Positions 7,511-8,534 of a stretch of 64,000 nucleotides of DNA are shown piece by piece; position 1 is the stretch's first letter; every line of letters starts with the position of its first letter. The translations under genes were made by a program, and so were the position numbers. The stretch comes from Lepidodermella squamata (Eukaryota; Animalia; Gastrotricha): the NCBI GenBank assembly GCA_047495785.1, contig JBLDXI010000039.1, forward strand, positions 1-64,000. Direction: 5' to 3'. The notes below the pieces were generated by a model. That model saw only the letters and a program-made list of their open reading frames with translations. It was not told the origin of the DNA and made no database searches.

Positions 7511-8534
7511 ACGTGTAATCTACACTTTGATCATGCCAATCAGGCCGAGAAGCGTCCCGATAAGCAGCGTATAATGCAGCAAAGTGGCACAGGCCACGCA
7601 TGTCTAAGTACACTCACTACGTGTAATCTACACTTTGATCATGCCAATTAGGCCGAGAAGCGTCCCGATTAGCAGAAAAATAGAAGATGATTAGTAGCAG
7701 GCCGCACATGTCTAAGTACACTCTCAACATGTAATCTACACTTTGATCATGCCAATTAGGCCGAGAAGCGTCCCGATTAGCAGAAAAATAGAAGATAATT
7801 AGTAGCAGGCCGCACATGTCTAAGTACACTCTCAACATGTAATCTACACTTTGATCATGCCAATCAGGCCGAGAAGCGTCCCGATACGCAGAAAACTAAA
7901 CGGCATCAATCTTGAAGCATATCATTAACTTGATCACACATCACGATGTTAATAAAATCAAAATTATCATGCGAGCGGAGCGAGCATGTGGTATGACCAA
8001 GTAAATTTACATTTTTACAGCGCTCATTAATAGATCGTATTTGCATGCTCGCTCCGCTCGCATGCTAATGTTATTTATATTAACATCGTGTTTTCTGTGC
8101 TATCACTTTACGCCGGTTTTTCAATTAAACGATCACTACGCTGCGTATCGGGACGCTTCTCGGCCTGATTGGCATGATCAAAGTGTAGATTACATGTTGA
8201 GAGTGTACTTAGACATGTGCGGCCTGCTACTTTTTGTAGCTTAATACGCTGCGAATCGGGACGCTTCTCGGCCTGATTGGCATGATCAAAGTGTAGATTA
8301 CATGTTGAGAGTGTACTTAGACATGTGCGGCCTGCTACTAATTATATCCTATTTTTCTGCTAACCAGGACGCTTCTCGGCCTAATTGGCATGATCAAACT
8401 GTAGATTACACGATGAGTGGGTACTTAGACATGCGTGGCCTGCTTCTAATTATCTTCATTTTTTCTGCTAATCTGGACGCTTCTCGGCCTGATTGGCATG
8501 ATCAAAGTGTAGATTACACGTGGTGAGTGTACTT
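7511..8534. repeat. Fold-back array: ~3.5 direct 108-bp units, a spacer with inner inverted repeats, then ~4 inverted units; second copy at ~9864-10887
   Basis: gtaatc recurs at 7515, 7623, 7731 and 7839. Reverse-complement units span ~8144-8534. Perfect 21-bp IR at 7968-7988/8044-8064. Confidence 0.95.

What the first reader, a model, noticed from the sequence alone, without database searches (positions are those of the whole stretch)
7511..8534. 28S-inserted element carries a fold-back array of repeats that mimic the 5' end of 18S rRNA
Seen: each 108-bp unit contains two blocks in 18S order. TTGATCATGCCAAT (7527-7540) matches 18S TTGATCCTGCCAGT (2057-2070) at 12/14. GCCACGCATGTCTAAGTACACTCACTACG (7593-7621) matches 18S GCCATGCATGTCTAAGTACACACTACG (2097-2123), with an exact 16-mer, 1 mismatch and a 2-nt gap. 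Units occur sense (~7511-7890) and antisense (~8144-8534) around inner IRs, so read-through transcription would make a ~1-kb hairpin. Inference: an rDNA parasite that makes dsRNA or small RNAs complementary to 18S nt ~8-74, or uses rRNA-like repeats as binding sites, decoys or guides. I know of no described element with this design.
Basis: partly seen in the sequence, partly recalled or inferred. Interest (0 to 1): 0.9.

Follow-up and report, generated by a model that had tools for sequence, protein, structure and literature searches.

The report
U2/18S patchwork repeats in rDNA transposon
A non-coding mobile element inside one 28S ribosomal RNA gene carries two mirror-image arrays of a 108-base repeat built from the first 37 bases of U2 splicing RNA plus a reversed scrap of the host's 18S rRNA; these pieces are kept far better than the DNA between them, but no RNA evidence shows that they act against 18S.

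Summary
The 108-bp unit holds a 35-bp copy of U2 snRNA nt 3-37 (two exact 13-mers at U2's own spacing) and, on the opposite strand, host 18S nt 48-68(74). Across six full units, U2 columns vary 2/35, 18S 3/21, spacer 20/27. The array sits in a 2,345-bp non-coding element, doubled head to tail, at 28S nt 1973-1980. It has a GGGAAG(AG) duplication, transposase-type end motifs and a Dada-like target. Best reading: captured RNA-gene scraps kept as a cis-acting DNA array, as Pokey keeps rDNA-derived repeats (0.45). A neutral fossil (0.3) or an anti-18S small-RNA source (0.15) remain open. Mirror units do not co-evolve, and the commoner unit type lies further from 18S. This scan found the same U2/18S array before, on other pieces of this genome.

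The parts
6617..8961 (+). 2,345-bp non-coding element, copy 1, inserted in 28S at nt 1973-1980 (6615-8961 if the duplication is 6 bp)
   Evidence: longest stop-free frame 93 codons
8970..11314 (+). identical tandem copy 2, with its own array at 9864-10887
   Evidence: 100% identical
6609..6616 (+). target-site duplication GGGAAGAG, repeated at 8962-8969 and 11315-11322; can be read as 6, 7 or 8 bp; empty sites at 19766 and 35597
6633..7010 (.). left subterminal cluster of the AAATCACC-type motif, both orientations
   Evidence: 12 motifs in the two ends, 0 in the middle, shuffle mean 0.05, 1 in 52.6 kb of other window DNA
8831..8945 (.). right subterminal cluster of the same motif
7110..7466 (.). 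19-bp near-palindromic tandem array, about 19 copies
7511..7891 (+). left arm: 3.5 copies of the 108-bp unit
8141..8534 (-). right arm: 3.7 copies, inverted
7520..7554 (-). U2 snRNA nt 3-37 copy (also 7628-7662, 7736-7770, 7844-7878 on -; 8154-8188, 8262-8296, 8370-8404, 8478-8512 on +)
7593..7621 (+). host 18S nt 48-74 piece, best unit (cores also at 7701-7721, 7809-7829 on +; 8203-8223, 8311-8331, 8419-8439 on -)
7562..7588 (+). variable spacer of the unit: same length in all units, 33-96% identical between units
7943..8089 (.). central imperfect inverted repeat between the arms (fold z-score -11)
8628..8782 (+). 8-bp tandem array AAAACTAG, about 19 copies
4637..13062 (+). interrupted 28S gene; both halves are 100% identical to the intact copy at 17794-21513

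Best explanation
A non-autonomous cut-and-paste element with a Dada-like target sits at one 28S site and is moved in trans by a transposase that binds the AAATCACC clusters at its ends (structure shown; enzyme inferred). An ancestor captured a 5' scrap of U2 and a reversed scrap of 18S, probably by gap repair or template switching (inferred). The joined unit was amplified in tandem and then inverted (shown by the arrangement). The U2 part, and less strictly the 18S core, are now kept as a fixed-period cis-acting DNA array, that is, binding sites for the element's or the host's proteins that help it persist in rDNA, like the role proposed for Pokey's rDNA-derived repeats (inferred). It is not mainly a cassette of anti-18S guides.
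For: U2 and 18S matches exceed shuffles. Variable columns: U2 2/35, 18S core 3/21, spacer 20/27; Fisher P 1.6e-8 and 3e-4, descriptive only because the units are related. All full units are exactly 108 bp, and the two exact U2 13-mers keep U2's 9-bp spacing although that middle is rewritten. Both orientations are equally kept, which suits a DNA signal. End-motif clusters, TSD and empty sites. The target reads TTCCCAGG on the minus strand, as does the Dada-5S target. Pokey precedent.
Against: No binding protein or transposase was identified. The U2 and 18S blocks share no clear motif with the 28S target or the element ends. Gene conversion among units could keep similar blocks similar without selection. 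Only one element sequence was available to me, and no outside relatives were found. The pull of the U2 middle toward 18S nt 14-22 is not explained by this model.
Confidence: 0.45

Rival explanations
1. Neutral fossil: U2 and 18S scraps were captured once and amplified by slippage and inversion. The conserved blocks are kept alike by conversion between units, and the array does nothing for the element.
For: U2 pieces ending at nt 37-45 occur naturally in several of the 126 metagenome hits, for example L009, L042, L072 and a 3x tandem in L076. The Keno/Utopia site is U2 nt 38/39. DNA transposons capture host DNA by gap filling. Units are mosaics of spacer and block types. Single units have no stable fold.
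Against: A near-invariant 35-bp block beside a spacer as low as 33% identical, at fixed length, is hard to get by drift alone. Earlier notes say distant families keep the U2 piece (not checked by me).
Confidence: 0.3
2. One reading: Pol I read-through makes a 1-kb hairpin. It is diced into small RNAs antisense to the 18S 5' domain (and, from the other strand, to U2), and these modulate rRNA processing or rDNA silencing.
For: The hairpin is very stable, with perfect stems of 91, 67 and 47 bp. One strand can pair 18S nt 8-22 and 48-68 in order, mostly with G-U-compatible changes. Nt 6-22 is the U3 box A/A' site. The U2 middle is 2-3 edits from antisense 18S but 3-5 from any sampled U2.
Against: The commoner unit type (4 of 6) matches 18S less well, 18/21 with a true mismatch. 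Mirror pairs differ by 14.3 bases on average, in the middle of the 11-17 range of all pairings, so the arms do not co-evolve. The best 21-mer to U2 is only 16/21. U2 and 18S complementarity lie on opposite strands. About three quarters of the unit is not 18S-like. No RNA run holds the sequence.
Confidence: 0.15
3. The fold-back itself is the function: a long hairpin or cruciform that stops or cleaves Pol I read-through, or silences the inserted rDNA unit, which lowers the cost to the host. The U2 and 18S origin is incidental.
For: The element is in the transcribed 28S and has three nested palindromic layers: the 19-bp array, the 108-bp arms and the central hairpin. A terminator role was proposed for Pokey repeats.
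Against: It does not explain why the U2 block in particular is invariant, and there is no mirror co-evolution.
Confidence: 0.1

Closest known systems
Pokey / mPok (piggyBac family, Daphnia; PMC3849761)
   Same: A DNA transposon at a fixed 28S site that carries 2-5 internal repeats copied from the rDNA unit (IGS A repeats, ITS2 C repeats). These repeats are the best-conserved part, their function is unknown, and cis roles were proposed. Tandem insertions also occur.
   Different: Here there is no TTAA duplication and no 12-16-bp terminal repeats. The repeats come from U2 and from 18S coding sequence, are inverted into a fold-back, and sit in a non-autonomous element (Pokey MITEs lack them).
Dada transposons (PMC3706591, PMC8869645)
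   Same: Insert in a multicopy RNA gene, have no terminal inverted repeats and a 6-7-bp duplication that can look like 8 bp. Tandem copies are separated by one duplication. The target core TTCCCAGG matches Dada-5S and resembles Dada-U1.
   Different: No Dada family in 28S is described in these papers. No transposase is present here. No subterminal repeat copying a target motif at equal distance was found. Three probes for the U2, 18S and end motifs had no hit in the held (cut) part of the Dada data set.
Keno and Utopia retrotransposons; U2 3'-truncated (tailless) pseudogenes (PMC4640811, PMC5322556)
   Same: They produce or border U2 fragments that end near nt 38, which is a possible source of the piece.
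   Different: They are retroelements or single insertions, not an amplified array inside a DNA-type element. The match here stops two bases short of the cut site.
Foldback-type elements (FB, Galileo, Tetris; abstracts)
   Same: Long inverted arms made of tandem subrepeats.
   Different: There the arms are the element's termini. Here they are internal, and I saw no duplication flanking them.

Membership tests
Dada | Encodes a Dada DDE transposase (zinc fingers, DxxH) | not testable with these tools
   Element is non-coding; no autonomous partner in the window or in earlier notes
Dada | 6-7-bp target duplication | tested here: inconclusive
   8 bases are repeated; readable as 6 bp plus AG (like Dada-U1) or 7 bp with CCA...TGG ends
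Dada | No terminal inverted repeats | tested here: met
   At most 3 bp inverted
Dada | Specific insertion in a multicopy RNA gene | tested here: inconclusive
   In 28S, in one of three copies, two elements at one site; genome-wide specificity rests on unchecked earlier notes
Dada | Target resembles known Dada targets | tested here: met
   Minus-strand CTTCCCAGG vs Dada-5S ATTCCCAGG and Dada-U1 ATTCGCAGG
Dada | Short subterminal inverted repeat equal to a target motif at the same distance (described for Dada-U6 and U1) | tested here: not met
   No such motif on comparing both ends with the target; therefore called Dada-like, not filed as Dada
Pokey/piggyBac | TTAA duplication and 12-16-bp terminal repeats | tested here: not met
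Pokey/piggyBac | Internal repeats derived from the rDNA unit | tested here: met
   18S piece in six units; a design analogy only
U2 snRNA gene | Full length with branch-site motif, Sm site and 3' stems | tested here: not met
   Match ends at nt 37; Rfam 12-16 bits against a cut-off of 46
Box C/D or H/ACA guide RNA | Antisense element followed by a D/D' box, or H/ACA hairpins | tested here: not met
   No CUGA box 3' of the U2-antisense 13-mers (read from the sequence); no stable unit fold; no Rfam hit above cut-off
Hairpin-RNA / siRNA locus | Transcribed and processed into small RNAs | not testable with these tools
Foldback element | Long repeat-built inverted arms form the termini and are flanked by a duplication | tested here: not met
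   Arms are internal; no flanking duplication seen
Spliceosomal intron in rDNA | GT...AG ends that restore the rRNA | tested here: not met
   No GT at any junction register

The most novel reading that the evidence does not exclude
The unit is a selected bifunctional module. One strand presents a U2-like 5' end whose rewritten middle, together with the downstream block, pairs collinearly with 18S nt 8-22 (the U3 site) and nt 48-74. As RNA or as single-stranded DNA it would tether the element to nascent pre-rRNA, or yield anti-18S small RNAs, giving a eukaryotic DNA transposon a nucleic-acid-guided link to active rDNA.
Probability: 0.12. Interest if true: 0.85.

Novelty: new variant of a known kind. 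Interest (0 to 1): 0.5.

Why it matters
DNA transposons that live in rDNA are rare; the papers read name only Pokey for 28S. A second lineage, with a Dada-like target and its own array of borrowed RNA-gene sequence, suggests that such repeats are a recurring need of rDNA parasites, and it gives a small, deletable module with which to test what they do. If the array works through base pairing with pre-rRNA or U2, it would be a new way for a selfish element to engage ribosome or spliceosome assembly. If it is a fossil, it is an unusual record of RNA-gene capture.

Tried and rejected
There is therefore no read, contig or expression evidence. Searches for relatives by DNA pattern found nothing in metagenome (chimera pattern), viral or prokaryotic contigs. 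Exact-protein look-ups meant to fetch more host DNA found nothing, so the host's own U2 and other element copies were not available. Rfam at loose threshold gave only palindrome-driven miRNA hits. Rejected: the idea that block 1 is fully explained by U2 (simulation P 0.003-0.03). Rejected: U6 mimicry, because the GATTAGC stretch varies among units. Rejected: a maintained local hairpin over the U2 start (one arm decays, no compensation, P 0.045). Rejected: a spliceosomal intron; a snoRNA guide; and capture of other RNA genes (U1, U3, U4, SRP, 5S, 5.8S and 28S gave no exact match of 11 or more bases, U5 one low-complexity 12-mer). The bacterial promoter scan was uninformative. Whether the perfect tandem dimer is real or an assembly duplication could not be tested.

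Full report
Setting. The window is an animal-type rDNA array with 5S genes on the opposite strand. The first 28S gene is split at nt 1973-1980 by two identical head-to-tail copies of a 2,345-bp element (6617-8961 and 8970-11314). GGGAAGAG is repeated at the left, middle and right junctions, and the two other 28S copies carry the empty site. The element is non-coding. A motif of the AAATCACC type occurs 12 times in its two ends and never in its middle, against 0.05 expected and 1 in 52.6 kb of other window DNA. That pattern is typical of transposase-binding ends (own knowledge). The finding is an internal part of this element.

Observation. The coordinates and quoted matches are right. The 108-bp arrays run 7511-7891 and, inverted, 8141-8534, and a read-through RNA would fold into a 1-kb hairpin. 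Block 2 matches host 18S nt 48-74 beyond chance: score 42 for the first unit against a maximum of 36 in 1000 shuffles, and P 0.003-0.009 for the inner units. Four of six full units match 18/21 with a 15-base exact core, and the two innermost partial units lack the block. Most of the block is the universal 18S consensus, with one host-diagnostic base in the core.

What was missed. Earlier notes of this scan pointed to U2, and I tested that myself. Rfam aligns the opposite strand to the U2 5' end. Against 126 U2 starts fetched from metagenomes, each unit has two exact 13-mers, U2 nt 3-15 and 25-37, separated by 9 bases as in U2 (one unit has one change). The score is 48 against a null maximum of 34-36 for a panel of RNA genes. 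The U2 piece and the 18S piece lie on opposite strands. Apart from one low-complexity U5-like 12-mer, no other RNA gene in the panel left a trace.

Block 1 is not simply U2. It lies inside the U2 copy, and U2 antisense already shares TTGATC and GCCA with the 18S start. But the rewritten 9-base middle is 2-3 edits from antisense 18S nt 14-22 and 3-5 edits from every sampled U2. Random edits of the same number reach 12/14 in only 0.3-3% of trials. One strand can thus pair 18S nt 8-22 with 14 of 15 pairs and nt 48-68 with 20-21 of 21, in the right order; nt 6-22 is where U3 binds. This test is post hoc and depends on the host's U2 loop, which I could not obtain.

Conservation. Across the six full units, 2 of 35 U2 columns, 3 of 21 18S-core columns and 20 of 27 spacer columns vary, and all units are exactly 108 bp. 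The units are related, so the Fisher values (1.6e-8 and 3e-4) are descriptive only. Two results weigh against an anti-18S RNA role. First, the commoner unit type is further from 18S and has a true mismatch. Second, mirror-image units are no more alike than other pairings (mean 14.3 differences; range of all pairings 11-17), so the arms are not co-evolving as a duplex. Single units have no stable fold. A hairpin-derived 21-mer would match U2 at only 16 of 21 positions.

Mechanism. Shown: capture of two RNA-gene scraps, tandem amplification, inversion, uneven conservation, and a DNA-type element at a 28S site. Inferred: mobilisation in trans by a transposase, capture by gap repair or template switching (precedent), and a present role as a fixed-period cis-acting DNA array (0.45). 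A neutral fossil kept alike by conversion is the main rival (0.3). It is helped by the natural occurrence of U2 pieces ending near nt 37-45 and by the Keno/Utopia site at nt 38/39.

Comparison. The closest design is Pokey, a piggyBac-type element in Daphnia 28S with 2-5 conserved repeats taken from the IGS and ITS2, of unknown function (PMC3849761). This element is not a Pokey: it has no TTAA duplication and no terminal repeats. Its ends and target look like Dada: no terminal repeats, a 6-bp duplication that appears as 8, and a minus-strand target TTCCCAGG as in Dada-5S (PMC3706591, PMC8869645). The target-copying subterminal repeat of Dada-U6 and U1 was not found, and no transposase is known, so I call it Dada-like and do not file it there. 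My paper searches found no U2/18S repeat array in a transposon.

One run holds 65% of the element's sampled words and none is on record as RNA; it may be the source sample. No relatives were found in the public contig collections. Claims that distant families keep the U2 piece and always use this site come from unchecked earlier notes.

Verdict. A real and unusual structure, misdescribed as an 18S mimic: a U2/18S patchwork fold-back inside a 28S-inserted, Dada-like non-autonomous element. It is a new variant of a known kind, with function unproven; interest 0.5. The scan has already reported this array on other pieces of the same genome.

Noticed in passing
window 7110-7466: The 19-bp array shares short words with both blocks of the 108-bp unit (AAGTAC, TTGATC) and a 9-mer with the host 5S internal promoter region (P about 0.013, post hoc). 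It may be a condensed version of the same binding motif. It is bracketed by TGTCGCA on both sides.
   Followed up: partly
window 7536, 7644, 7752, 7860 and mirror sites: The rewritten U2 middle creates a CCAAT box (CCAATCAG in 5 of 8 units). CCAAT motifs are also frequent near Dada ends shown. This could be another reason for the departure from U2.
   Followed up: no
window 7943-8089: Central hairpin with a 20-bp perfect stem containing the GCGAGCGGAGCGAGC motif; possibly a small nested element.
   Followed up: partly
window 8836-8844 and 8931-8939: The end motif ATCACCGAA also occurs in the host 5S gene, which may hint at a 5S-targeting ancestry; could be chance.
   Followed up: no
window 8936-8947: A 12-base match to the U5 Sm-site region near the right end; low complexity, probably chance.
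   Followed up: no
window 22571-29892: LINE with intact endonuclease and reverse transcriptase ORF inserted antisense in the rDNA intergenic spacer.
   Followed up: partly
window 38696-61600: Polinton-type element in the intergenic spacer with terminal inverted repeats, a 1411-aa ORF (probably the polymerase), an A32-like ATPase and an integrase fused to a phospholipase A2-like domain and chromodomain.
   Followed up: partly
window 13295-13413, 21745-21863, 37576-37694: 5S genes are linked to every rDNA unit on the opposite strand.
   Followed up: no
L076 1158-1272; L009 7330-7364; L042 3486-3520; L072 421-455: Natural U2 5' fragments ending at nt 37-40, including a threefold 38-bp tandem in L076; possible Keno/Utopia junctions or truncated pseudogenes.
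   Followed up: no
L010, L071, L062: Compact clusters of U1, U2, U3, U4, U5, SRP, 5S and tRNA genes within 2-6 kb in metagenome contigs.
   Followed up: no
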